Below, piece by piece: positions 1 to 13,900 of a DNA stretch of 64,000 nt; position 1 is the stretch's first letter; each line of letters begins with the position of its first letter. The stretch covers positions 2,232,001 through 2,296,000 of the forward strand of contig CATNEN010000041.1 of the NCBI GenBank assembly GCA_950097015.1, given 5' to 3'. The position numbers and the translations under genes are program-made. The notes under the pieces were generated by a model, which ran no database searches, had not been told where the DNA came from, and was given only the letters and a program-made list of their open reading frames with translations. This DNA comes from Macrostomum hystrix (taxonomy: Eukaryota; Animalia; Platyhelminthes).

Positions 1-324
1 GGAGTAATTGCAATTTGTATGCAGCGAAAACCGTGCGTGATGCCGAGTTTAGAGGACATGTACTTCTACGAGAACTTATAAAATCAAGGGCATATTATTA
101 GCACAATTGGTTCTAAAAACGACAAAAAATCATGATAAATCTTCGTAAAAACAATGAAAAATGCACTTTTAGAAAAATTAATGAAGCGAACTCTAAAAAT
201 CAAAGCATGACTTTTGTTAGTCTAAATCATAATTTTCTTGGAAATCAAAACGTGTAAAATTATTTTCAGATGCTACAAAACTCGACATTCCTTTTCTGCT
301 GTTCTGAGGCTGACGTGGACTTCA

Positions 325-1775
325 GATCCCACTGAATCCCAGCCACTCTCTACTCCTGAGATCCCTAGCATCCCACTGAATCCCAGCCACTCCCTACTCC
401 TGAGATTCCTGGCATCCCACTGAATCCCAGCCACTCCCTACTCCTGAGATCCCTGGCATCCCACTGAATCCCAGCCACTCCCTACTCCTGAGATCCCTGG
501 CATCCCACTGAATCCCAGCCACTCCCTACTCCTGAGATCCCTGGCATCCCACTGAATCCCAGCCACTCCCTACTCCTGAGATCCCTGGCATCCCACTGAA
601 TCCCAGCCACTCCCTACTCCTGAGATCCCTAGCATCCCACTGAATCCCAGCCACTCCCTACACCTGAGATCCCTGGCATCCCACTGAATCCCAGCCACTC
701 TCTACTCCTGAGATCCCTGGCATCCCACTGAATCCCAGCCACTCCCTACTCCTGAGATCCCTAGCATCCCACTGAATCCCAGCCACTCCCTACACCTGAG
801 ATCCCTGGCATCCCACTGAATCCCAGCCACTCCCTACACCTGAGATCCCTGGCATCCCACTGAATCCCAGCCACTCCCTACACCTGAGATCCCTGGCATC
901 CCACTGAATCCCAGCCACTCCCTACACCTGAGATCCCTGGCATCCCACTGAATCCCAGCCACTCCCTACACCTGAGATCCCTGGCATCCCACTGAATCCC
1001 AGCCACTCCCTACACCTGAGATCCCTGGCATCCCACTGAATCCCAGCCACTCCCTACACCTGAGATCCCTGGCATCCCACTGAATCCCAGCCACTCCCTA
1101 CACCTGAGATCCCTAGCATCCCACTGAATCCCAGCCACTCCCTACACCTGAGATCCCTAGCATCCCACTGAATCCCAGCCACTCCCTACACCTGAGATCC
1201 CTAGCATCTTACTGAATCCCAGCCACTCCCTACTCCTGAGATCCCTGGCATCCCACTGAATCCCAGCCACTCCCTACACCTGAGATCCCTAGCATCTTAC
1301 CGAATCCCAGCCACTCCCTACTCCTGAGATCCCTGGCATCCAAGTGAATCCCAGCCACTCCCTACACCTGAGATCCCTAGCATCTTACTGAATCCTAGCC
1401 ACTCCCTACTCCTGAGATCCCTAGCATCCCACTGAATCCCAGCCACTCCCTACTCCTGAGATCCCTGGCATCCCACTGAATCCCAGCCACTCCCTACTCC
1501 TGAGATCCCTGGCATCCCAGTGAATCCCAGCCACTCCCTACTCCTGAGATCCCTGGCATCCAAGTGAATCCCAGCCACTCCCTACACCTGAGATCCCTAG
1601 CATCTTACTGAATCCTAGCCACTCCCTACACCTGAGATCCCTAGCATCTTACTGAATCCTAGCCACTCCCTACACCTGAGATCCCTAGCATCCCACTGAA
1701 TCCCAGCCACTCCCTACTCCTGAGATCCCTGGCATCCCAGTGAATCCCAGCCACTCCCTACAACTGAGATCCCTG
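325..1775. repeat. 44-bp minisatellite, ~33 copies (ATCCCTGGCATCCCACTGAATCCCAGCCACTCCCTACTCCTGAG), intronic in SLC38A9
   Basis: Period read directly (TGAATC at 421 and 465). Minor variants CTAG/CTGG, ACTCC/ACACC and CTTACT. Confidence 0.97.
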
Positions 1776-1874
1776 GGTACAGTGCAAGCCTTCAGTAAGG
1801 TAGAATTTCGCGGAAATGAAAGCCTGGAATCGCCAGCAATTAAGGCGGCGCAAGCGCTAAATGCTTTGGTTTAC

Positions 1875-1981
1875 ATTGTTCTCTGGCCGTTTCTGCTCCC
1901 GCATCAGCGACACGATGAAGCAGTGACTGAACAGGGCCAGAGACAGCACGCCGGCCATGGTCACAAAGCTGGGGGAGAACT
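1875..1981 (-). CDS. SLC38A9: SLC38A9 TM6 exon, variant B ([35 protein letters not shown])
   Basis: Acceptor ccttgcag|AG, donor AAT|gtaaac, 107 nt, same phases as variant A, open frame, homologous to A. Not annotated as such by the ORF track. Confidence 0.82.
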
Positions 1982-4900
1982 CTGCAAGGCGGGGTGGGCA
2001 GGGCGGGCAGCGAAAGTGTGCGGCGGAGCGGCCAACGAGCGGCCTGGGCGGTGGGTGGCTCAGGTGCGATCATCATCAAGCGGCCGCACCTCGAAAGCAA
2101 CTGAGTTGCATTGTGTAAGCAATTTAGCACAACATCTCCAATAAATAAAAAACTCAACAACAACAAAAAAGCAACAGAATTAGGGACACTGAGATCTCCC
2201 TGCAACAGTTCACTAACATTATTCTCTGGCCGCAGCTGGTTCCTGGTCAGCGTGATGACTGCGTTATGGCTGAACAGCGCCAGAGATAGCACGCCCGTCA
2301 TGAGGGGAAAGGTCCGCCGCAGCTCTGCAGGTGCGTCAGGTGACTGACTGGCTGACTGCCTGACTGCCTGCCTGACTGCCTGCCTGACTGACTGACTGAC
2401 TGCCTGACTGACTGCCTGACTGCCTGCCTGACTGACTGCCTGCCTGACTGCCTGCCTGACTGACTGACTGACTGACTGACTGACTGACTGACTGACTGAC
2501 TGACTGACTGACTGACTCACTGACTGCCTGACTGACTGACTGCCTGACTGCCTGACTGACTGACTGACTGACTGACTGACTGACTGACTGACTGACTGAC
2601 TGACTGACTGACTGTATTACCCAAAACGCATACGCAATTGTAAGGGAGGTCGGTGGCAGAGCGTTTAACGCGTTTGCCTCTCGCACCACGGTCCCTAAGT
2701 TCGATTCCACGGCGAGGCCACATTTATTACGGGCGCAGCCGCGGAGAGAAGGCTTGGGGGGCCCTTGAGAGCCAACCTCAAAGGCACAGTGAAGTGTACA
2801 CTGCCTGACGATGAGAAAGTCAGGGCAGATGTGCACGCCTTTGTAAGCGTATGCCTGCGTACAGTATCTGTGTGCGTGTGTGCTCAGGAGTCAGCGAAAT
2901 GGGCAGAATTGCCTCCTCGCTGGCTGCGGGTCTAAAGTCACCAAATGATGTGCCATGCCCGCAGCCCTCCTGCAGCTATTATTATTATTATTATATGCAA
3001 TCGTACATATAAACAAGTGAATAGCAAGCAATGGAGATACCAGTTAAATGCTGTGTCTGTGCCTATCTGCCGGGGTGTCCCGTGTGCGCATGTCAGCTAG
3101 GAAAGCAGGCTGAAGGTGCATCAGCAAGACCCCAGCTAATGTAAGCAGCTAAATAACTGGCTCGTGTTTTCAAACTGAATACTGCAAATGCACTGTGCAG
3201 ATTGAACTGATTGCTTTGTCCAAGCCGCACGGCCTGTCCAAGGCCCTAACCATAGTGCTCTAAATTTCTTTAACCTGTGGTTTAAGGCTAGCCTATTTAA
3301 TTGGGAATCAAAAGTACAAGAAACAACACTATTAGGGCACAGTCGTGGAGAGAAGTCTTGGGTGCGAATTGCTCAACTTAAACTTTTGAGAGCCGAACCC
3401 AAAGGCACTCAATCACGGCTGATGTACAGTACACAGCTGTGTGTGAGTGTTTGCCTGCGTACAGTGCATGTGTGCTTAGGAGTAGACGGATGGGCAGAAT
3501 TGCCTCTCACTGTCAGCGAATGAAAATGATTGTCAGCTAATGCTAATGATAATATTATTATTATTATTATTAGAGCAACAGGTAAACAGCAAACACATGG
3601 GGAAAGTTTATAGAAAGAAAGTTGCACTTCTTGAGCACTGGTAGCTCAGGCTGAACTGCATATTACAAACTGAGCAGTACTCACGATGGATAACACTCCT
3701 GACATCCGTGGCGCTGAAGTCCAGGTGGAAGCCCCACTGAGCGGCCTTCACGCCGACAAAGACCAGCACGTAGACCACGGCCACGGTGCCCAGCGCGTTG
3801 AACTTGGAGAAGAAGCCGGGAGACTTGATGCAAACCAGCGGGAACAGCAGCACCACCAGGTAGAACGGCACAGTCCGCGTTTTGCTCCACACCTTCTGGA
3901 ACAGCGGCTGTGTGGAGTTGTCGAACTCGGGCGGACCAGCGGTGGCAGGCTGGGGGGTGCCGGTGGTGTTGGGCAGGCCGGTTGGTTCCACGGGCACCGA
4001 TGGATGAGTTGGGCAGAGCACGTGGAAGGTGCGGTTGCCAAAGTGGAACTCATTCGGCGTGCCATCGATCTCGCTGACGTTGAACAGCTGGCTGTGCACG
4101 AAGCAGCCGCTCTGCGGGTGTGGGCATCGAGCTTGAGTGAGTATAAGGGAAGCGGGAGCGACTGGGAGATGCAGGACCCGCTGTGAGCATGAGGGATGCA
4201 GGACCTGCTGTGAGCATGAGGGATGCAGGACCTGCTGTGAGCATGAGGGATGCAGGACCTGCTGTGAGCATGAGGGATGCAGGACCCGCTGTGAGCATGA
4301 GGGATGCAGGACCTGTTGTGAGCATGAGGGATGCAGGACCTGCTGTGAGCATGAGGGATGCAGGACCTGCTGTGAGCATGAGGGATGCAGGACCCGCTGT
4401 GAGCATGAGGGATGCAGGACCCGCTGTAAGCATGAGGGATGCAGGACCCGCTGTGGGACTGGGAGATGCAGGACCCGCTGTTGGGTTAGAAGCGGTTGTT
4501 CTGAAGGAGCTACCTTGTACATGATGAGCTAACCTACCTGATAGAGGAAGTTGGACAGCAGCACCCAGTAGACGATGATGGCGCCGAGCAAGGCGGCTGC
4601 CGAGAAAAGCACGGCCACGAGCTCGCCGTACTTGCCCAGGTAAAATTTGCAAACGTCGGAGAATTCCGAGACTGGCACGCCGCTGCGGCCTGAAAGGAAA
4701 AGTTTAGAGAAATTCTGTGATCAATGATTGACAGGTGCTCAGGCTCAGGTGGTCTTGCGGGCTCACCCAGGTTGGAGTAGCTCCGCAGCACCAGGTAGGC
4801 GGTGTAGAAGGTCACCGCCGTCATGAACAGCAGCACCGCCAGGCTAGTGGCGAAGCCGGCCTCCTTGACAGCCCACGGCATGTTCAGCAGCGAGGTGCCC

Positions 4901-5510
4901 ATCATGGTGTTCCAGATGCTAAAGCTGCGGGCACAGCGGCAGAGTCAAGGGTCAGGGCTAGCGATCCAATGATTGCTCCAAAACAACAAACAACTCACAT
5001 AGTGATAATGCTGCTTTGCTTGGAGATCTGCTTGAAGGGCAGGATTAGCAGAAACTGTGGCGGCACCACGTGAGCGGGCATGAGCAGCTGGCTATCAGCC
5101 CCTGGAGCAATCCTGCTGTAGTACTTGTACCTGCTCAGCATGGCCGTTGTCCGGGTCTGAACGTCGGTGCCGGGCCCGGGGGGAGTTGATGTCGAAGGTC
5201 CGGGCGCTGCAGGTGGCTCCGAGCGGGCGCGGTCTCTCGCAGGTTCGGAGAGGGTGGAGTCGACCGGCTGCTCCGGCAGGTAGCTGGACGCGGGGGCGTT
5301 TACCGAGCCATAGCCAATGGGCAGCCGGACGGCGGTGCCCCGCTCAGTCTCGTAGGTGCGCGCAAACGAGCCGGCGCGGCCAGCACTGGCCAACGAGGAC
5401 AACGAGGGCGACAAGAGCGGAGCTGCAGCGGCGCTGGAGTCAGCGCGGCCTGGTCGCTTGGTGTTCACAAGCAGTGGGCGCCGTTCAGTGGAGGACTGCG
5501 GATGCGACAT
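1875..5510 (-). CDS. SLC38A9: Lysosomal amino-acid transporter / mTORC1 arginine sensor SLC38A9; 5' part only, the gene continues left of the window
   Basis: Spliced exons on minus: 5510-4999, 4924-4767, 4689-4538, 4111-3685, then 2324-2218 and/or 1981-1875, all GT-AG and phase compatible. Motifs [71 protein letters not shown] and [16 protein letters not shown] match SLC38A9 as recalled. Confidence 0.93.
2218..2324 (-). CDS. SLC38A9: SLC38A9 TM6 exon, variant A ([35 protein letters not shown])
   Basis: Acceptor cctgcag|AG, donor AAT|gttagt, 107 nt, phase 1 in and 0 out. Confidence 0.88.
2340..2614. repeat. (TGAC)n/(TGCC)n tetranucleotide microsatellite
   Basis: Read directly; it generates the spurious SQSV ORFs. 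Confidence 0.97.
2643..2992 (+). mobile_element. tRNA-derived SINE, full length
   Basis: A-box-like GGTGGCAGAGCG, B-box GTTCGATTCC and (ATT)n tail. Imperfect TSD ATACGCAATTGTA (2630-2642) / ATATGCAATCGTA (2993-3005). Homologous copies elsewhere in the window. Confidence 0.85.
3331..3571 (+). mobile_element. Diverged 5'-truncated copy of the same SINE
   Basis: Shares GGAGAGAAG(T)CTTG, TGCCTGCGTACAGT, GGGCAGAATTGCCTC and the (ATT)n tail. Confidence 0.65.
4160..4480. repeat. 27-bp minisatellite (GTGAGCATGAGGGATGCAGGACCTGCT), ~11 copies, SLC38A9 intron 3
   Basis: Read directly. Confidence 0.95.
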
Positions 5511-8500
5511 TTTTGGTGTGGAGATTCAGCACAGTTGGCTGAGAACTGCAATTTAATGAAACCAGCAATGCTCTTAATTAGATTATTCAACTGAGTCAGC
5601 TGCTTAGTCAACAATAAATAAATAAAAGAATATTAATTTAATGAAAAAATCAAGACAATGTTGTAGACATAAAAATTGCTTTGAAAGAAAGAAGCTTTGT
5701 AGCTAGTTTTTAAAGTACTGCAAGCAAAGCTATTATACAAGTAGTATTTGTGCTGTTTAAATGTACTTTTTATTGTACAAAAATAAAGTTTTATTTTTTT
5801 ATATTTCGATGAAATGTACCTATATGCAAATCAAATTATATTTGTTCAATAATTTATAAAATAATTTTTTTTCCAAGTTCATTTATATAAACTAGATGAT
5901 GTACTTAAAAAAGTATGTTAGGCCTTCTTTATAATTGACAGCCAAAATTTTTAATGCCTATATGTTTATTGCTTATTATATACAGGCACTATTATTGGTA
6001 CTTTTATTATGTAATCAGACTTTCATTTCTAATATACACAAAACATGTAGCTTTGTGTAGGCCCACATCAATATATAAGCTACCAAAAAGATAGGAAAGA
6101 AAAAAGTAAAAAAACAAAGTTATAAGTACAAGAAATGGAATTAAATAAATCAGAGTTAAAAAATCCTTAATATTTTTGGGGTCCTTGAGATTTTGTCAAC
6201 TTACAAGGTCTAGGCACATTGTTATCCAACTATGTGTGTTGGATACTTTGGAGACAATCTTACAATCTCACAATGGCATAACTTCGGTTTCCCACTCAAT
6301 TATTGTATCACATTTTGCACATTTGGGTGGCTACAACAAGCAAGCTAACCACCTGACTGTGAATAACTCTTTATACTTCCGAGTCTCAAGCAACCCAGAT
6401 GCACACAAAAATACATTGTCTTGACTTGATGTATGCTCTATAGGATCCAAAATATGCAAAAATGTGTATGAATAAGTTAGGCCTACAGCAGGAAACCGAA
6501 ATTATGTCTTTACACCTTGTCTTATATTATATATACTAGGACCTAGCCTCTGTCATTTAATGAATATAATTACTAAAGTAATTATGTAATAATTAGTGTA
6601 CTTTTATTAGATACACCTTTATAAGATTTATTAACTACCTTAGCAAAAAAACTGTAAATTTAGCCACTATCCTTTTTGCATTCTGCATTCTGAGTTTAGG
6701 AATATAGCTACACTGTTGAGCAATAACTCACAAAGAAAGTTATCCAGATAATCTGACTTTGCTTTCAGAGCACAAATAAGAGCATAAACGTACATAAATT
6801 AAGTAAATCATAAATGTTCTTGATTGACACCGCTTTTTGGGGTTCCAAATCTTAAGTAGCGAACCAAATTTTTACATTCCAATAGCTGTACGGCTACGGG
6901 AAACTGAAAATTTTATTAATGTCTCGTGAGCTCCTAATATAGCTATGCAAAATTTTATTGCTACGAACATTATTGTCACTGAAGTGGATGTTTTGGAAAA
7001 AGGATATTGCACCATTGTCAAATCCTTTCTGTAGTACCGCATTATTTATAGCAGCAGCTGGTTTCATAGAAAACCAAGGTATTAAAATTCAGAACAATAT
7101 GCTTAGCTTATATGAACTTAATGATGAGCATGCCAAGTTCTTTGTAAAGAAGCAATTGATATATGATAATGCTTACCATTTACATAATATTTTATATACT
7201 TTGCACTATCTCTTTTGTTTAGAATGGTAAAAGAATTTGATTTCTTAAAACCATAAGTTACTGTCCTACGTTCTTAAAAAAACTGTGCACAGTTTGCCAA
7301 TGTGCACGGCTATTGTCATGGCTGACGTATGACATTATTGTTTCATTAATCCCATCGTTAAATCGTATTCTGGTTCTGGGTTTTGTAAGTCTGGGTTCCA
7401 TGGAAATACCATTCTTTGTTACTAAAGTTATACAGTAGGCCCCTAAGCAAAAAACAGCAAAATTGTTCTTATTACACTAATAGACTAAGGAACTATAATA
7501 TAAAGACTATACTAGTAGTGTCGTAAGTAGTAGGCCTAGAAACTTAGTTAACTTAGTAGCCTAGTAATAGCAACTAGTTCCAGTTCTAATTTTTATAAGT
7601 TAATGTTTTTTAATGAAAAGCAGGATCATGTCAGGGCCTATTGGCCTAACAAAAATGTAAATTTCAGTTTTTAATGTTATTAATGAATGCTAATTAGCCA
7701 GGGCCCACAAAGTTGTTATTGTTATATATATATTTTACAGGGTAGCTTCTTTAATATAACATAGGCCTAACTTGTCTAAGAAATTTCTCAAATTTGAACA
7801 ATTTAGTGCTGTTTTAAAGGTAATTTTTTGCCAATCGTAAAGCTGCATTGAAGCCAATTAGCTAGTAGGGCCTAGGCTCTACAGTATCTTCTTTTAGACA
7901 AACCCTTTATATATATTATTTCCCTATTCTTATCCTATAGTAAGGTGGTAAAGTTTTTACCTAAATTTCAAAGTGTGGGTCAAGGGAAATAACTGATAGG
8001 CCCTAGTCTGGATCTAACTATTAGATTGTCTGGGTGGGTAGATTTATAAGTAGATAGACCCTAAGTTGATACACATGTAGGTGAGGCAGAATAATTTTCT
8101 AGGACAGACAGAAAAAGAAAGAAAAAACTAACTTGAGTATTTACCAGTCTCAATCATGTTGGAACTCAGAAATTCTGGTGCATCACAGAAAAAGAATAAG
8201 AAGGCTAAAATACACACAAAAATGTTAGTTTTGCACTCTTTATAAGTTTGAAAATTAAACTAGGCCTAAAAATTCTGATAAATTGGCAAGGAGTCAGTTT
8301 TCTATTTTCAATGAACTTACTATTTACACTCCAGTGTAAAGCAAGTACTCACCAACCATGTATCTCTAATTTTGCTGGCAACACCAATGCAAGTCTAAGG
8401 ATGAAAGTAAATTAAAGGATTATAAAAGGAAAGGACAAAAGAGAATTTATCTATCTATAAGTAGGCCTAACAGTTGTAGATAAAGAAGGCCATTTTGTCA

Positions 8501-9218
8501 CCTTTCAAAGAGTAATAAAACATTATAGATAGGCCATACTTATAAAATATAGTAATAGCATGTAAGCAATATTTTTGTATCTTAAACCATGTTTTCTCTA
8601 CTCTGGAATACTAGAGCAAATACTTGCCGCAATCAATAACAAAGGAGGAAATATAGTCACCTCTTATCATTGGAGCCTGTCAAAGCTAGGCAATCATATG
8701 TGGCATTATGGGTCATGTCTTGTGTGTATCTTTTTTGTCCTTAAATTAAGCTTTTAATAATATTTTTAATGTATTGTTTAAATGTATTATATCACTAAGC
8801 ATAACTTCCTTAAAGTATTTAGGAGTTTGAAATGTATATGAAATATTAAATCAGAATTAGAATGCAAAGTGAGTTTACAAGCAGGTAGACATTGGCTAAG
8901 GCTCTAAGCTAAATTTCTTAATTAAATCTAAATTTCTATTGCCAGGTGCACCAAAATGCTGCTGCAGGCCAGTTATTATGCTTGTATCCCCTTTACACTG
9001 TCTCATATAGAGTGATTAAGATAGAGGCTACAGAACCATGTATTTTTAACTTATGGAATTTAAATGGCTTTGTTACTGATTCTTGTAGGCATATCTAATG
9101 ATCAGGTGCATAATGTTTGTATTAATTATGTAGAATGATTTCGTACAGATACAAGTCAAGTATATTTCACTCCTGCGCCAGCTTCCGCCTCCATTTCAGC
9201 CAGTGGCTCCCGCCCGCA

Positions 9219-10103
9219 ATGTCCAAGTTGAAGCCCACCAAGACCCGCAAGCTCCGTGGCCACGTGTCGCACGGCCACGGCCGAGTCGGCAAGCACCGCA
9301 AGCACCCCAGCGGCCGCGGTAACGCAGGTGGCGCCCACCACCACCGCACCAACTTCGACAAGTACCACCCCGGCTACTTTGGCAAGGTGGGCATGCGGCA
9401 CTTTCACCTGAAGCGCAACCCGTACTACTGCCCGGCCGTCAACACCGACAAGCTGTGGTCGCTGGTCTCGCAGCAGACCTACGACAAGTACAAGGACGGC
9501 AACAAGGAGGGCAAGGTGCCCGTCATCGACTGCCTGCAGGCGGTGAGTCAGCTCAGTAATTTTAAACTGAGCCATCGATTTATTTAACTCTGCCTGAATT
9601 CTGTTAAACAATGCTTCCAATGCCTTTGCAGGGCTACTTCACCTGAATTCTGTTAAACAATGCTTCCAATGCCTTTGCAGGGCTACTTCACCTGAATTCT
9701 GTTAAACAATGCTTTCAATGCCTTTGCAGGGCTACTTCACCTGAATTCTGTTAAACAATGCTTCCAATGCCTTTGCAGGGCTACTTCACCTGAATTCTGT
9801 TAAACAATGCTTCCAATGCCTTTGCAGGGCTACTTCACCTGAATTCTGTTAAACAATGCTTCCAATGCCTTTGCAGGGCTACTTCACCTGAATTCTGTTA
9901 AACAATGCTTCCAATGCCTTTGCAGGGCTACTTCACCTGAATTCTGTTAAACAATGCTTCCAATGCCTTTGCAGGGCTACTTCAAGGTGCTCGGCAAGGG
10001 AAACATGCCGAAGGTGCCGGTCATCGTGAAGGCGAAATTCTTCAGTAAGAAAGCCGAAGAGAAGATCAAGGCCGTGGGCGGCTCCTGCGTGCTGATGGCC
10101 TAA
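9219..10103 (+). CDS. RPL27A: 60S ribosomal protein L27a (uL15)
   Basis: Exons 9219-9542 and 9975-10103. [42 protein letters not shown] and [14 protein letters not shown] at 10144. Confidence 0.97.
9593..9984 (+). repeat. 8 x 49-bp tandem repeat spanning the RPL27A intron 3' end and the first 10 nt of exon 2
   Basis: Unit CCTGAATTCTGTTAAACAATGCTTCCAATGCCTTTGCAG|GGCTACTTCA; one substitution at 9715. Confidence 0.97.
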
Positions 10104-10911
10104 GCACAGATGCTTTTTGACTGACTGATTTTGTGACGAATGAAATAAACTATTGCAAAAGTAATGGCTTCATGCTCACTGCGGCTGCTGCCTTTTGTCA
10201 GAATCGTGGAACCAAAAAGTGGACAGCAAGCTTCCTTGTTTTTTAATTATGCAGTTCACGAATTTCAGAAAAAGTTCGTAAGCACATCTATATTTGTTTC
10301 TCATGGTTTGAGTTCATCGAAATTATCCAGCGTACGCTAGTACAGTGGGTGTCAGGGCCAAGTCATGTTTGAAATGGTGTGGGCTCAGAGGTGCCATGAA
10401 AGCAAGTTGAAGTGCATCAAACCCAGCTTTAGGGCATGTGAGAATACTGGTTGGCAATAGGTTCAATGCTTGATAGTTAGCATGTTCGAAGGCCTGCCAA
10501 GAAAACTTTAAAACAAAAGCGATGCATAGCGTGAGAAAACTTCACAAACTGAGCTAGCTTTGATGACTCATTTAAGCTAACCTGTCAGTCGCTCCGTAGG
10601 CAAGAGGCAAGGCTTTGTCTGACTTAAAACGTAATCTTTATTTGAACCTGCAGAATTGGGGAAGGAATATGCAACTACAATGCCTGCGGACTTCTAAATT
10701 GGTTGTTGTAATTTGTTGCTTTGTGACTGGCTGTTGTCAAGGACCAGCTGTTTGACCAAGGAAGATGCTGTTGCAAGGAGATAAATTTTAGTCAATTGGG
10801 GCCGGGGCGGTTTAAGCAGTGTTTAGTTCTGCGGAACCCAAATAGCATACCAACAGTGCAAGCCAAAAAGTAGATTACAGGAGGCAAATCCAGTTGGATA
10901 TCGTGTGTATT

Positions 10912-13900
10912 ATGAGCGTTTCTCTGAGGCTCATTGTCATATGCATTGCTGTGCTCGGAAATGGACACACCAGCCTCTGCAGCATTGATCTGGGTAAGAT
11001 TTCCGCTAGTAACTGCATGAGCAGCTTTTTTAACTAATGTGGCATGATGAGCTCGTACTTATTTGCCGGAACTTCAAGCTTGAAGTCATTTCTACAGAGC
11101 TTTTGATAGATTCTTTGAAGCTGTTCGAGCTTCAAATTATCACCGAACTTTTGTCACAGACGCAGAGGATGCGCCGCCTCTGGTGTCCTACGGCCCACAC
11201 CAGGTCAGGGCCGTCGGCACAGCTTATGCCGAGTTCCCGCCTGCGGCAGTGAAGCTCAGCTGGTCAACCGCAGGCCATCCAGCGCTCGCGAATCAGTCAT
11301 ACTTCAACGGTTACGCCACCTCCGACTACTTCCTGTTCACCTTCGACTTAGTCAACGACATTCGGGGCTACGTGATCGGCCGGGACTCTCCCGGCATCTA
11401 CGTGAAGACCTTCCAGCTCGCCTACTGCAGCTCGCCCGGATCAACACTGCTGAGCTACTCTGCAGGCTCTCATTACTCCCCAGCGCTGCTGCCTGGCATC
11501 AACAGCAGCGACATGAGCAACCACACCTACCAGCTTCCCTTCGGCAGCATCAGGGCGCGGGTGCTGAAGCTCACACCAGTCGACTTTGTTGGCAACAAAT
11601 CCATCAAGATTGAGTTCGTCGGTCTGCCCGTTCGTGAGTGAATTCAGGCTACTCCGAATTGTGCCGACGGTAGCCGCAGATCATTTTCGAGGTGCAGCTT
11701 GATTGAATTACCATAAATGATAACTGGCATAGGGGATGCTCGCTTACCCCTGCTTCACGAAGCCAACCCTTTGATACAGTACCAGTATAACGTCTTTAAA
11801 GATGAACAAATCAACCAGAGAATCTGGATTTTTTGGCAAAACATTTCGATTGTGATTTGATCGACTCAAGAACTTGACATCATTCTAGGATTTAGGCAGA
11901 CTAGGGCAAGTTTTGTCGAGGTTCCTCAAAATAAATTGCTCAATAGCTGCTATTCCACGCGGTCTCTCTGAGGACTAAGGTAGCAAATATACATTTCTCT
12001 CCTGTACTCTCCAATGGACTGAGTTTGAGGCTAGCCCATAGACAAGATAATCAACAGCAAATCATGCGAAATGTGGTTGTGCTTGGAGAACACTCCAGTT
12101 TAAACGGCTGCTGCTTTGGCTTTCAGAGTGCCCGCCCATTTCAACCTACAAGCTGACTCTGCCGGCGCCCAGGCAGGTCAACGCGACATCCTTCACACTG
12201 AGCACCAACAACAGCCAGACCGTCTGGTTCGAGGACCTCTATCATGTAACGAACGTGTCACTAACAGGAAACAACTGCACTCAGAGTCAGTCCATGGTGA
12301 TCACTTTCATCACTAACAATGGGATTGCCGTGGGTGACCCACTGGTGAGTTCTGTCTCCTGGCCACTTATGCGGGCCGAAAAGCCTACATATAGTGGCGG
12401 CAATAACTAGAAGAAGGATGTTGCGCTTGCAATTGGTGGGAACTTTTGCGAATCTCGCTTACACCTAAGGGCACGTTGAGTAGATAGCAAATAATAATTT
12501 TTTAACTTCATGAAATTCGCTAAGCGTCACAGCTTGGACACCTGCATCGGAGCATTTGAAGTATGGAAGACAATTACTTTTTTGAGAGCATTATTTCTTG
12601 AGCATTTTGTCAATGTGTTATTTTCTATAAATCGTTGAACTGTACAGTTTTGTAAAACAATTTGGAATAGGGCTTGATGTGAACTGTTTGGTTAAATAAA
12701 CGAAATGAAGGCAATCGATTGCGAATGCATGTTCTCTGTAGCAGCAAGAGGCCAAAAGAGATATCAGACACGGAGCTTCATCAGTGCATGCAAGCTACCT
12801 TTACTCCTGCTATTTCGATGCAACCACATTTTCAGACGCTGACGGCCAACCCGGAAGACATTATGGGCACGCTGTACCCACTGAACGCCACCGTCAACGC
12901 TGCCAAGGTCCGGGTTTACTTCCGAAGCAGAGACTGCGACAACGTTGAGTTCAAATTCTTCGGCTGCCTTGCCGACGGTGCGTCAAAATAAGCACAATCT
13001 CAGAATACTAATATGAGTTGACTTGATATTCAGCAACAGCCTGCCAGTCAATTGGCAGCATTGAATAGCGCCTCAGTTTTCGTCCATTATGTTAGACAGC
13101 CGTTATAATTTCCCCACGAGCTTTCCATTACTTTAATTTTATGTCTCTAGACAGAACCCTGCTGTTTTAGCTAGCCAAACTCTGGGACGTCTGTCAAGCG
13201 TGTTGTCAGAGGTGACAAGTCGCAGCTGAAGTGGAAGTTACCATTTGTTTCTTTCTGCAGCCTCTGTCTATTGTATTATTTTCCAGTTCAGGTTTTTTAA
13301 TTCCTTGAGAAGCTAAAACACTTTCAAAATGAGACCTGCTCCATGCCTGGGCCTGCATTCTGCCTCAGCCTTCTCCGGGCAGGAATGCATGGAAACTCTG
13401 GAAAGCAAACAGCACTGTGGGGCTCCCATAGTCCCACATTCTTTGCCATATGGTCACAAATGCTTTTTGCTCTACTTGGATGGACGACAACAATTGAAGC
13501 CATGCATTGACTTTTGAAGCGAAGCTTGCAGAAGCTTCTGATCAGCAGGTCGGGCCTTCCTCTGCTGCTACAGCTTTCTCATCTGTTTTGGAATCAACGA
13601 TTGCCTTCATCGATCAGTACAGGAAAGATGCGCATTGTGGCCCAGCTTCACACCAAGTCCCAAGTCCTGCACAGCTTCCCCCGCCCCTATATTGTCTTCA
13701 TCTGCGGCAGCTGAATCCAAGTCCTTGTTTGTCAGCCGCCTTGCGCGTGACCGGTCGAGTGGAGATTCTGCAGCTCTCGCTTATGCTACTTTAATATGCA
13801 GCTATGAGAAATCCAAGTGGGCCGGGTGGGCAGTGACTTCTGCAGCTGATTTTGCTGAAGGAAGTCGTTGGGGTAAACCAGGTGATGTAGCCTTAATTTT

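What the first reader, a model, noticed from the sequence alone, without database searches (positions are those of the whole stretch)
1875..2324. Candidate mutually exclusive exon pair swapping TM6 of the lysosomal arginine sensor SLC38A9
Seen: two tandem homologous exons (2324-2218 and 1981-1875), each exactly 107 nt, phase 1 in and 0 out, with intact GT/AG sites and open frames. They share [12 protein letters not shown] and RPENN but differ in between ([11 protein letters not shown] vs [11 protein letters not shown]; LRRTFPL vs FSPSFVT). 107 is not a multiple of 3, so including both would frameshift, which is the classic mutually-exclusive-exon signature. Known: in LeuT-fold SLC38 transporters the unwound TM6 (LAFFIHN in vertebrate SLC38A9) lines the substrate site with TM1. 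Inference: this animal may make two isoforms with different substrate or sensing properties for mTORC1. Variant A keeps the vertebrate HN; B has HC. I know of no described MXE at this position.
Basis: partly seen in the sequence, partly recalled or inferred. Interest (0 to 1): 0.8.

Follow-up and report, generated by a model that had tools for sequence, protein, structure and literature searches.

The report
Alternative TM6 exons in flatworm SLC38A9
A Macrostomum flatworm's gene for the lysosomal amino-acid sensor SLC38A9 carries two interchangeable, selectively preserved copies of the exon for the core membrane helix TM6, and RNA shows each spliced in without the other, so the animal probably makes two versions of this sensor.

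Summary
On the minus strand, two 107-nt exons (A 2324-2218, B 1981-1875) have AG/GT sites and open frames. Both align to zebrafish SLC38A9 residues 344-377, which cover the end of loop 5-6, TM6a, the unwound hinge, TM6b and loop 6-7.

RNA contigs join the upstream donor (3685) to A in two runs and directly to B in two runs from two studies. One contig runs exon 4, then A, then 553 nt of other sequence, skipping B. Including both exons gives a stop seven codons into B.

The Macrostomum lignano orthologue keeps both exons in all three gene copies, with the same length, phase and splice sites, although the introns no longer align. Between the two lineages dN/dS is 0.12 for A and 0.08 for B, the same as for the constitutive TM exons.

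A keeps the H-N motif found in 106 of 122 relatives. B has H-C-F, seen otherwise only in a Macrostomum paralogue that has a single B-type exon. Every annotated M. lignano protein from this gene uses A, and I found no paper describing the pair. Schistosoma has one exon.

Not shown: B's donor joined to the next exon, isoform ratios, the selection mechanism (no RNA pairing found) and any functional difference. The scan has noted alternative exon pairs in other genes of this genome, not in this one.

The parts
4999..5510 (-). Exon 1 of the SLC38A9 orthologue (ATG at 5510), encoding the N-terminal cytosolic region with the Rag-binding / N-plug motif (..[29 protein letters not shown]..)
   Evidence: Sequence reading. 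Aligns to human SLC38A9 residues 60-94 of PDB 6wj2 at a modest E of 0.014. tblastn with M. lignano P0154.
4767..4924 (-). Exon 2, encoding TM1 with the [11 protein letters not shown] motif
   Evidence: Pfam Aa_trans E 1e-7. Splice sites read. 89% identical to M. lignano P0154.
4538..4689 (-). Exon 3 (TM2)
   Evidence: Pfam Aa_trans at a weak E of 0.009. Splice sites read. 91% identical to P0154.
3685..4111 (-). Exon 4 (luminal loop, TM5 region). Its donor at 3685 serves both alternative exons.
   Evidence: PDB 6c08/7kgv SLC38A9, E 1e-17. RNA contigs cover 3685-4114 and continue upstream (records 24, 31). Joints 3685->2324 and 3685->1981.
2341..2614 (-). (CAGU)n microsatellite in intron 4 that ends 16 nt before exon A's acceptor. 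A (CAGT)n array sits in the same position in M. lignano.
   Evidence: Tandem Repeats Finder. Sequences read.
2218..2324 (-). Exon 5A, 107 nt, the canonical TM6 version (R at the zebrafish R344 position, H-N-A hinge)
   Evidence: RNA joint 3685->2324 in X3 and X4, and X4 record 25 covers exactly 2218-2324. M. lignano counterpart at L001:10107-10213, dN/dS 0.12.
1982..2217 (-). Intron between A and B (236 nt; 164 nt in M. lignano), too long for steric exclusion
   Evidence: Not alignable between the two lineages.
1875..1981 (-). Exon 5B, 107 nt, the divergent TM6 version (S at the R344 position, H-C-F hinge)
   Evidence: RNA joint 3685->1981 in X2 and X3. M. lignano counterpart at L001:10378-10484, dN/dS 0.08, P=7e-5.
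1..1874 (-). Start of the intron downstream of B, containing a 44-bp x33 minisatellite at 326-1776. The next exon lies off the window.
   Evidence: No SLC38A9-like coding hit in 1-1874.

Best explanation
This is a tandem-duplicated, mutually exclusively spliced exon pair in the SLC38A9 orthologue of a Macrostomum flatworm. The exon-4 donor (3685) is joined either to exon 5A (2324) or to exon 5B (1981), and the chosen exon is then joined to exon 6, which lies off the window. Each exon is 107 nt (3n+2). Taking both puts a stop seven codons into B, and taking neither shifts the frame, so only one-exon mRNAs encode a transporter. The rest are presumably removed by nonsense-mediated decay (inferred). 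The swapped 35 residues cover the end of loop 5-6, TM6a, the unwound hinge, TM6b and loop 6-7. Isoform A is the canonical SLC38A9. Isoform B changes the luminal-gate arginine position (R to S), the near-invariant hinge asparagine (H-N to H-C) and the next residue (A to F), which in zebrafish is Cys363 and contacts the inhibitory N-plug. B therefore most likely alters gating, substrate handling or N-plug release (inferred, not tested). The duplication arose in the macrostomid lineage, probably before the gene duplication that produced a paralogue carrying only a B-type exon.
For: Anatomy and identity.

RNA:
- Joint 2324<->3685 in X3 and X4.
- Joint 1981<->3685, which skips A, in X2 and X3, from two studies.
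- Both joints have GT..AG ends.
- X4 record 25 (783 nt) is 123 nt of exon 4, then exactly 2218-2324, then 553 nt lying nowhere on 1790-2217. The A mRNA therefore skips B.

Frame: A plus B gives ...PENNSSPPAL-stop.

Conservation:
- M. lignano locus L001 has both exons, 107 nt each, with CAG|..|GT.
- Loci L004 and L005 carry both exons with only synonymous differences.
- Window versus L001: A has 10 synonymous and 4 non-synonymous changes (omega 0.12, P=9e-4). B has 11 and 4 (omega 0.08, P=7e-5). This matches constitutive exons 2 and 3 (0.08 and 0.07).
- The introns are unalignable.

Structure mapping:
- The model of P0154 has helix 422-432, a break at 433-438 (LFCHNA), then helix 439-444.
- Zebrafish R344 and P348 form the luminal gate and A357(O) is part of the predicted Na1 site (10.1101/288233).
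- Cys363 on TM6 binds the N-plug (PMC9994763).

History:
- The whole-protein tree places P0154 and paralogue P0155 as sisters, 100/99.
- The TM6-only tree groups the paralogue with the B exons, 96/86.
- Schistosoma bovis has a single A-type exon.
Against: The junction from B's donor (1875) to exon 6 was not among the rows shown, and exon 6 is off the window.

Thirteen further joints were not printed, so rare A-to-B co-inclusion cannot be excluded.

All the runs are assembled contigs whose RNA nature is the tool's guess. X3 also has low, continuous intron coverage, which could be pre-mRNA or DNA. Isoform ratios cannot be read.

M. lignano has three near-identical copies of the gene, and this genome may too. 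A and B mRNAs could therefore come from different copies.

No docking/selector pairing or U12-type sites were found, so the selection mechanism is unknown and NMD is only inferred.

The TM6 tree rests on 35 columns.
Confidence: 0.85

Rival explanations
1. Copy-specific exon use. The genome holds several near-identical copies of this gene, as M. lignano does. One copy always uses A and another always uses B, so no single pre-mRNA is alternatively spliced.
For: M. lignano has three copies, g1-g3, that are 96-97% identical across this region. Assembled contigs cannot be assigned to a copy. X4 shows only A and X2 only B.
Against: All three M. lignano copies keep both exons and all four splice sites intact, with only synonymous differences. 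That is not expected if each copy had given up one exon. X3 holds both junctions at similar contig depth (6.98 and 6.4).
Confidence: 0.07
2. B acts mainly as a poison or regulatory exon. It is included together with A, or leads to intron retention, to down-regulate the mRNA by NMD. It does not encode a second protein.
For: A plus B gives an early stop. B's donor-to-exon-6 junction was not displayed, and X3 has unspliced coverage downstream of B.
Against: B is joined directly to exon 4, skipping A, in two studies, and that mRNA is in frame. B's codons are under strong purifying selection (omega 0.08, 11 synonymous against 4 conservative replacements), which a mere poison exon would not need. 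A paralogue uses a B-type exon constitutively.
Confidence: 0.05
3. B is a decaying, functionless duplicate (pseudo-exon), and the B junctions are splicing noise.
For: No annotated protein uses B. B departs from the near-invariant H-N motif.
Against: Frame, length and both splice sites are kept across a divergence of dS about 0.5-0.7 at which introns no longer align. The neutrality test gives P=7e-5. B junctions were seen in two independent studies.
Confidence: 0.03

Closest known systems
Vertebrate SLC38A9 (zebrafish structures 6C08 and 7KGV; human N-terminus in 6WJ2)
   Same: It is an orthologous protein. The only PDB hits are SLC38A9. The [10 protein letters not shown]1 motif is present, the YYSR..P.HVVP N-terminal motif aligns to the human Rag-binding segment, and exon A keeps F-x-H-N and ..PENN.
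   Different: The zebrafish and other annotated sequences recovered here show a single TM6 version, and Schistosoma has one TM6 exon. This gene has two alternative exons. B replaces the hinge N with C and the residue at the N-plug contact position with F.
Macrostomum lignano paralogue BOX15_Mlig002873g1 / Mlig024480g1-2 (P0155, P0237, P0238)
   Same: It is the sister gene of the orthologue (100/99). Its single 107-nt TM6 exon is B-type (FSP.F...H-C-F) and groups with the B exons (96/86).
   Different: It has only one TM6 exon, so the B-type is constitutive and no A-type copy is found at the locus. It is about 50-57% identical overall.
SLC7A2 CAT-2A/CAT-2B mutually exclusive exons (from my own knowledge, not checked here)
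   Same: It is an APC-superfamily arginine transporter in which two mutually exclusive homologous exons give isoforms with different substrate affinity.
   Different: It belongs to a different family (SLC7). The exons encode a different segment, near TM8-9 rather than TM6. It is a vertebrate plasma-membrane transporter.
SLC12A1 (NKCC2) A/B/F tandem-duplicated exons
   Same: Tandem-duplicated, mutually exclusive exons swap part of a cation-chloride cotransporter. They are listed among human tandem-duplicated exon substitution events (PMC9741552). That they encode TM2 and change ion affinity is from my own knowledge.
   Different: It has three exons, belongs to a different family and swaps a different helix. 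The exon length there does not by itself enforce exclusivity (from my own knowledge).
Dscam1-type docking/selector RNA pairing
   Same: One exon is chosen from a tandem homologous set. Earlier notes of this scan report such pairing in other genes of this genome (I did not check them).
   Different: No inverted repeats link the introns around A and B in the window or in M. lignano, and no intron sequence is conserved between them.

Membership tests
SLC38A9 (lysosomal amino-acid transporter / mTORC1 sensor) | Aa_trans (LeuT-fold, SLC38) transmembrane domain | tested here: met
   Pfam PF01490 on exon 2 (E 1e-7) and weakly on exon 3. The M. lignano orthologue is annotated Aa_trans. Its AlphaFold model is a multi-helix bundle with pTM 0.75.
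SLC38A9 (lysosomal amino-acid transporter / mTORC1 sensor) | Closest to SLC38A9 rather than to other SLC38 members | tested here: met
   The only PDB hits are SLC38A9 chains. Named database relatives are SLC38A9 or 'neutral amino acid transporter 9-like'. The tree places it within flatworm SLC38A9 sequences.
SLC38A9 (lysosomal amino-acid transporter / mTORC1 sensor) | TM1 WNTMM / GTS motif used for arginine binding | tested here: met
   [13 protein letters not shown] is encoded in exon 2. The motif is described in 10.1101/288233.
SLC38A9 (lysosomal amino-acid transporter / mTORC1 sensor) | Long cytosolic N-terminus with the Rag-GTPase-binding / N-plug segment | tested here: met
   Exon 1 residues 117-151 align to human SLC38A9 residues 60-94 in 6wj2, but only at E 0.014.
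SLC38A9 (lysosomal amino-acid transporter / mTORC1 sensor) | Lysosomal location, arginine-regulated Rag binding and leucine efflux | not testable with these tools
   This needs cell biology and transport assays.
Mutually exclusive, tandem-duplicated exon pair | Adjacent homologous exons of equal length and phase with their own splice sites | tested here: met
   Both are 107 nt, phase 1 in and 0 out, with CAG|..|GT, and are 65% identical in DNA and 57% in protein.
Mutually exclusive, tandem-duplicated exon pair | Each exon joined on its own to the common upstream exon in RNA | tested here: met
   Joints 3685->2324 (X3, X4) and 3685->1981 (X2, X3).
Mutually exclusive, tandem-duplicated exon pair | Each exon joined on its own to the common downstream exon | tested here: inconclusive
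   For A, X4 record 25 continues for 553 nt past 2218 without touching B. For B, the donor junction was not among the rows shown, and exon 6 is off the window.
Mutually exclusive, tandem-duplicated exon pair | Both together or neither is absent or non-productive | tested here: inconclusive
   A plus B is non-productive, with a stop seven codons into B. No 2218->1981 joint is among the 15 listed, but 13 joints were not shown.
Mutually exclusive, tandem-duplicated exon pair | Both copies kept by selection in relatives | tested here: met
   Both are present in three M. lignano loci. Omega is 0.12 for A and 0.08 for B.
Docking-site / selector RNA-pairing mechanism | Complementary intronic elements flanking the alternative exons, conserved between species | tested here: not met
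   No such inverted repeats were found. The introns are not conserved. A finer RNAduplex scan timed out.

The most novel reading that the evidence does not exclude
Macrostomum makes two functionally distinct lysosomal amino-acid sensors from one SLC38A9 gene. The B-type TM6 loses the luminal-gate arginine, has hinge H-C-F instead of H-N-A, and alters the N-plug contact position. This changes which amino acid gates the transporter, or how readily the N-plug is released to the Rag GTPases. Exon choice would be regulated by tissue or feeding state. The same B-type innovation was later fixed in a separate paralogue, a case of splice isoforms resolved into genes.
Probability: 0.3. Interest if true: 0.72.

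Novelty: new member of a known kind. Interest (0 to 1): 0.55.

Why it matters
SLC38A9 is the lysosomal arginine sensor upstream of mTORC1. How TM1/TM6 movements couple to release of its N-terminal plug is still inferred from two zebrafish crystal structures.

Evolution has kept a natural isoform pair here for a long time. It swaps exactly the TM6 hinge, a luminal-gate residue and the N-plug contact position, and leaves the rest of the protein identical. A paralogue fixed in the B state accompanies it. Together these amount to a ready-made structure-function experiment.

The case also adds a nutrient sensor to the transporters and channels diversified by tandem exon duplication. It documents an unannotated coding exon in the model flatworm M. 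lignano. It may also illustrate alternative exons being resolved into separate paralogues.

Tried and rejected
- **Word-index protein searches.** I searched for short or mid-length fragments carrying A or B, using an ORF with a region restriction. Both searches came back blank, so no congener transcript fragments were available.
- **The look-up of encoding contigs for P0001.** Nothing is on record. P0154, P0155 and P0235 worked instead.
- **RNA pairing as the selection mechanism.** The repeat finder found no inverted repeats linking the introns. The one 24-nt, 75% complementary pair overlapping B's donor (185-208 and 1861-1884) is weak and I took it as chance.
- **Steric exclusion.** Rejected, because the A-B intron is 236 nt here and 164 nt in M. 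lignano.
- **U2/U12 incompatibility.** Rejected, because all donors read as ordinary GT sites (GTGAGT, GTTAGT, GTAAAC).
- **A third exon copy.** None in the window or in L001.
- **An older origin of the duplication.** The Schistosoma bovis locus has one TM6 exon. No planarian genomic locus was available.
- **Mis-laid paralogue transcripts as the source of the B junctions.** Rejected. The X2 contig matches 213 nt of exon 4 with one mismatch, whereas the paralogue is about 50% identical in protein.
- **A tRNA-derived SINE in intron 4.** ARAGORN and Rfam found nothing.
- **A relic A exon in the paralogue locus.** Only an 8-residue match at E about 9 was found, which I treated as chance.
Full report
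**What is there**

The minus strand of window 1-5510 carries the 5' half of an SLC38A9 orthologue.
- Exon 1 runs 5510-4999, starting at the ATG.
- Exon 2 runs 4924-4767 and encodes [11 protein letters not shown], the TM1 motif.
- Exon 3 runs 4689-4538.
- Exon 4 runs 4111-3685.

All introns are GT-AG. Pfam Aa_trans matches exons 2 and 3. Exon 4 hits only SLC38A9 chains in the PDB (6c08 and 7kgv, E about 1e-17). Exon 1 aligns to human SLC38A9 residues 60-94 in 6wj2, the segment solved bound to Rag-Ragulator, though only at E 0.014.

After the exon-4 donor (3685, C|GTGAGT) come two homologous exons, A at 2324-2218 and B at 1981-1875. Each is 107 nt, flanked by cag|..|gt, and runs from phase 1 to phase 0. 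They are 65% identical in DNA and 20/35 in protein, while their flanks are unrelated. Each peptide on its own hits only SLC38A9 in the PDB, over the same zebrafish residues 344-377. The window holds no third copy. The next exon lies beyond the window's start. The region 326-1776 is a 44-bp x33 minisatellite inside that intron.

**RNA evidence**

Six public runs hold this locus, and I laid four of them on 1790-4140. All are assembled contigs, and their RNA nature is the tool's guess. However, they contain precise GT..AG joints.
- 3685->2324 appears in X3 and X4.
- 3685->1981, which skips A, appears in X2 (study P1, organism B) and X3 (study P2, organism C).
- X4 record 25 (783 nt) consists of 123 nt of exon 4, then exactly 2218-2324, then 553 nt that lie nowhere on 1790-2217. 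That A mRNA skips B and continues into downstream exons.
- X3 carries both junctions at similar contig depth (6.98 and 6.4). X4 shows only A and X2 only B. Contigs show presence, not absence.

No 2218->1981 joint is among the 15 listed, but 13 were not printed. The junction from B's donor to exon 6 was not displayed. X3 also has thin continuous intron coverage, which could be pre-mRNA or DNA. Splicing A to B gives ...PENN-SSPPAL-stop, so co-inclusion is non-productive.

**Conservation**

An exhaustive HMMER search with exon 4 and a word search seeded with its best hit found the closest relatives in Macrostomum lignano.
- P0154 (BOX15_Mlig026656g2) is 74-90% identical to the window's exons. The window therefore comes from a different Macrostomum lineage.
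- P0155 is a paralogue, 50-57% identical.

The M. lignano locus L001 contains both exons: A at 10107-10213 and B at 10378-10484. Both are 107 nt with CAG|..|GT, and they are separated by 164 nt. The two other M. lignano copies (L004, L005) also carry both exons, with only synonymous differences.

| Exon (window vs L001) | Synonymous changes | Non-synonymous changes | dS | dN | omega | Neutral binomial P |
|---|---|---|---|---|---|---|
| A | 10 | 4 | 0.46 | 0.055 | 0.12 | 9e-4 |
| B | 11 | 4 | 0.66 | 0.052 | 0.08 | 7e-5 |

Constitutive exons 2 and 3 give omega 0.08 and 0.07. Outside the exons nothing aligns between the two lineages. Both exons are therefore as constrained as the constitutive TM exons.

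Every annotated M. lignano protein of this gene uses A. A search for short proteins with the B peptide found nothing, so B is unannotated.

**What is swapped**

An AlphaFold model of P0154 (pLDDT 80 overall and above 90 in this region) places the exon as follows:
- Positions 5-15 form a helix (TM6a).
- Positions 16-21 (L-F-x-H-N-A) form a break.
- Positions 22-27 form a short helix (TM6b).
- The remainder is the loop into TM7.

The zebrafish papers assign roles to several residues in this stretch.
- R344 (loop 5-6) and P348 (TM6a) form part of the luminal gate, and A357(O) is part of the predicted Na1 site (10.1101/288233).
- Cys363 on TM6 is hydrogen-bonded to the inhibitory N-plug (PMC9994763).

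By the alignments, A and B compare as follows at these positions:
- At the R344 position, A has R and B has S.
- At the P348 position, A has P and B has V. The M. lignano A exon has A here, so this position is not strictly kept.
- At positions 361-363, A has H-N-A and B has H-C-F.

Among 122 family members with a TM6 match, 106 have H-N and 112 have N at that position. H-C followed by F occurs only in the three copies of the M. lignano paralogue. H and N are at least 90% conserved in a 50-sequence alignment. That B changes gating, substrate handling or N-plug release is an inference from these positions. Nothing here tests it.

**History**

In a whole-protein tree, P0154 and P0155 are sisters (100/99) within flatworms. 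The paralogue locus L002 has a single 107-nt TM6 exon of B type and no A copy.

A tree of the 35 TM6 residues groups the five Macrostomum sequences together (85/93). Within that group, the paralogue falls with the two B exons (96/86). Forcing A and B together without the paralogue costs 7.2 log-likelihood units (p-AU 0.046). Schistosoma bovis has one A-type exon with the same boundaries.

The simplest reading is an exon duplication in the macrostomid lineage, followed by a gene duplication, after which the paralogue lost A. An ectopic transfer of a B-type exon from the paralogue cannot be excluded. With 35 columns this remains tentative.

**Mechanism of exclusivity**

- Steric hindrance is excluded, because the A-B intron is 164-236 nt.
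- The donors read as ordinary GT sites with no U12-type consensus.
- No inverted repeats link the flanking introns in either lineage, and no intron block is conserved. A finer duplex scan timed out.

What is established is the frame rule (107 = 3n+2). Removal of wrong products by NMD is inferred.

One conserved feature near the choice point is a (CAGU)n array ending 16-20 nt before exon A's acceptor. It is present in both lineages, at window 2341-2614 and L001 9596-10086. I did not test its relevance.

**Comparison and novelty**

This is the well-known class of tandem-duplicated, mutually exclusive exons, which is enriched in channels and transporters (PMC9741552). Functionally the closest parallels are SLC7A2 CAT-2A/2B and SLC12A1 A/B/F (the details are from my own knowledge). 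Full-text searches found no such event described for SLC38A9 or for Macrostomum. Earlier notes of this scan report other alternative-exon pairs in other genes of this genome, but none for this gene. I rate it a new member of a known kind.

**Limits**

- No raw reads were available, only contigs.
- Run organism names are coded.
- The species of the window is not identified beyond 'a Macrostomum lineage distinct from the sequenced M. lignano'.
- Exon 6 is off the window.

Noticed in passing
window 2341-2614 (minus strand (CAGU)n); L001:9596-10086: A (CAGT)n microsatellite ends 16-20 nt upstream of exon A's acceptor in both the window and M. lignano, although the rest of the intron no longer aligns. 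It puts dozens of tandem CAG triplets just before the real 3' splice site and leaves A with a short, poor pyrimidine tract. B has a C-rich tract. It may bear on the choice of exon.
   Followed up: partly
window 2650-2995 and about 3335-3576: Two diverged direct copies of a high-copy repeat lie in intron 4. Contig depth there reaches about 14,000 in runs X3 and X4, against about 10-20 on the exons, and hundreds of contigs from all four runs match at 85-95%. ARAGORN and Rfam give no hit.
   Followed up: partly
window 326-1776, 4168-4481; L001:8143-9210, 10707-11044, 11525-12694: The introns of this gene are packed with minisatellites in both lineages: 44 bp x33 and 27 bp x11.6 in the window, and 30/60 bp, 20 bp and 22 bp x54 in M. 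lignano. The units are unrelated between the two lineages but sit in comparable introns.
   Followed up: no
L001:11525-12694 versus L001:9596-10086: The 22-bp unit of the M. lignano intron-6 minisatellite contains ACTGACTG, the exact complement of (CAGT)2 in the array upstream of exon A. Many 8-bp pairings could loop out A, B and exon 6. No counterpart exists in the window's visible intron.
   Followed up: no
L001:4766-4918 and 6952-7104: Exon 3 is present twice in the M. lignano locus, with about 2 kb between the copies that matches RNase H / reverse-transcriptase-containing M. lignano proteins. The 894-aa UniProt model P0001 reads through this insertion.
   Followed up: no
window 185-208 and 1861-1884: A 24-nt inverted repeat, 75% complementary, has one arm covering exon B's donor site. 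It is weak and probably chance.
   Followed up: no
window 1790-4140, runs X2-X4: The samples differ in which isoform their contigs show: X4 only A, X2 only B, X3 both at similar depth. This hints at regulated or individual-specific use, but contigs cannot show absence.
   Followed up: no
window 9135-10103 (+): The neighbouring gene encodes a ribosomal protein L27a-like product (..[15 protein letters not shown]..). This identification is from my reading of the ORF list only.
   Followed up: no
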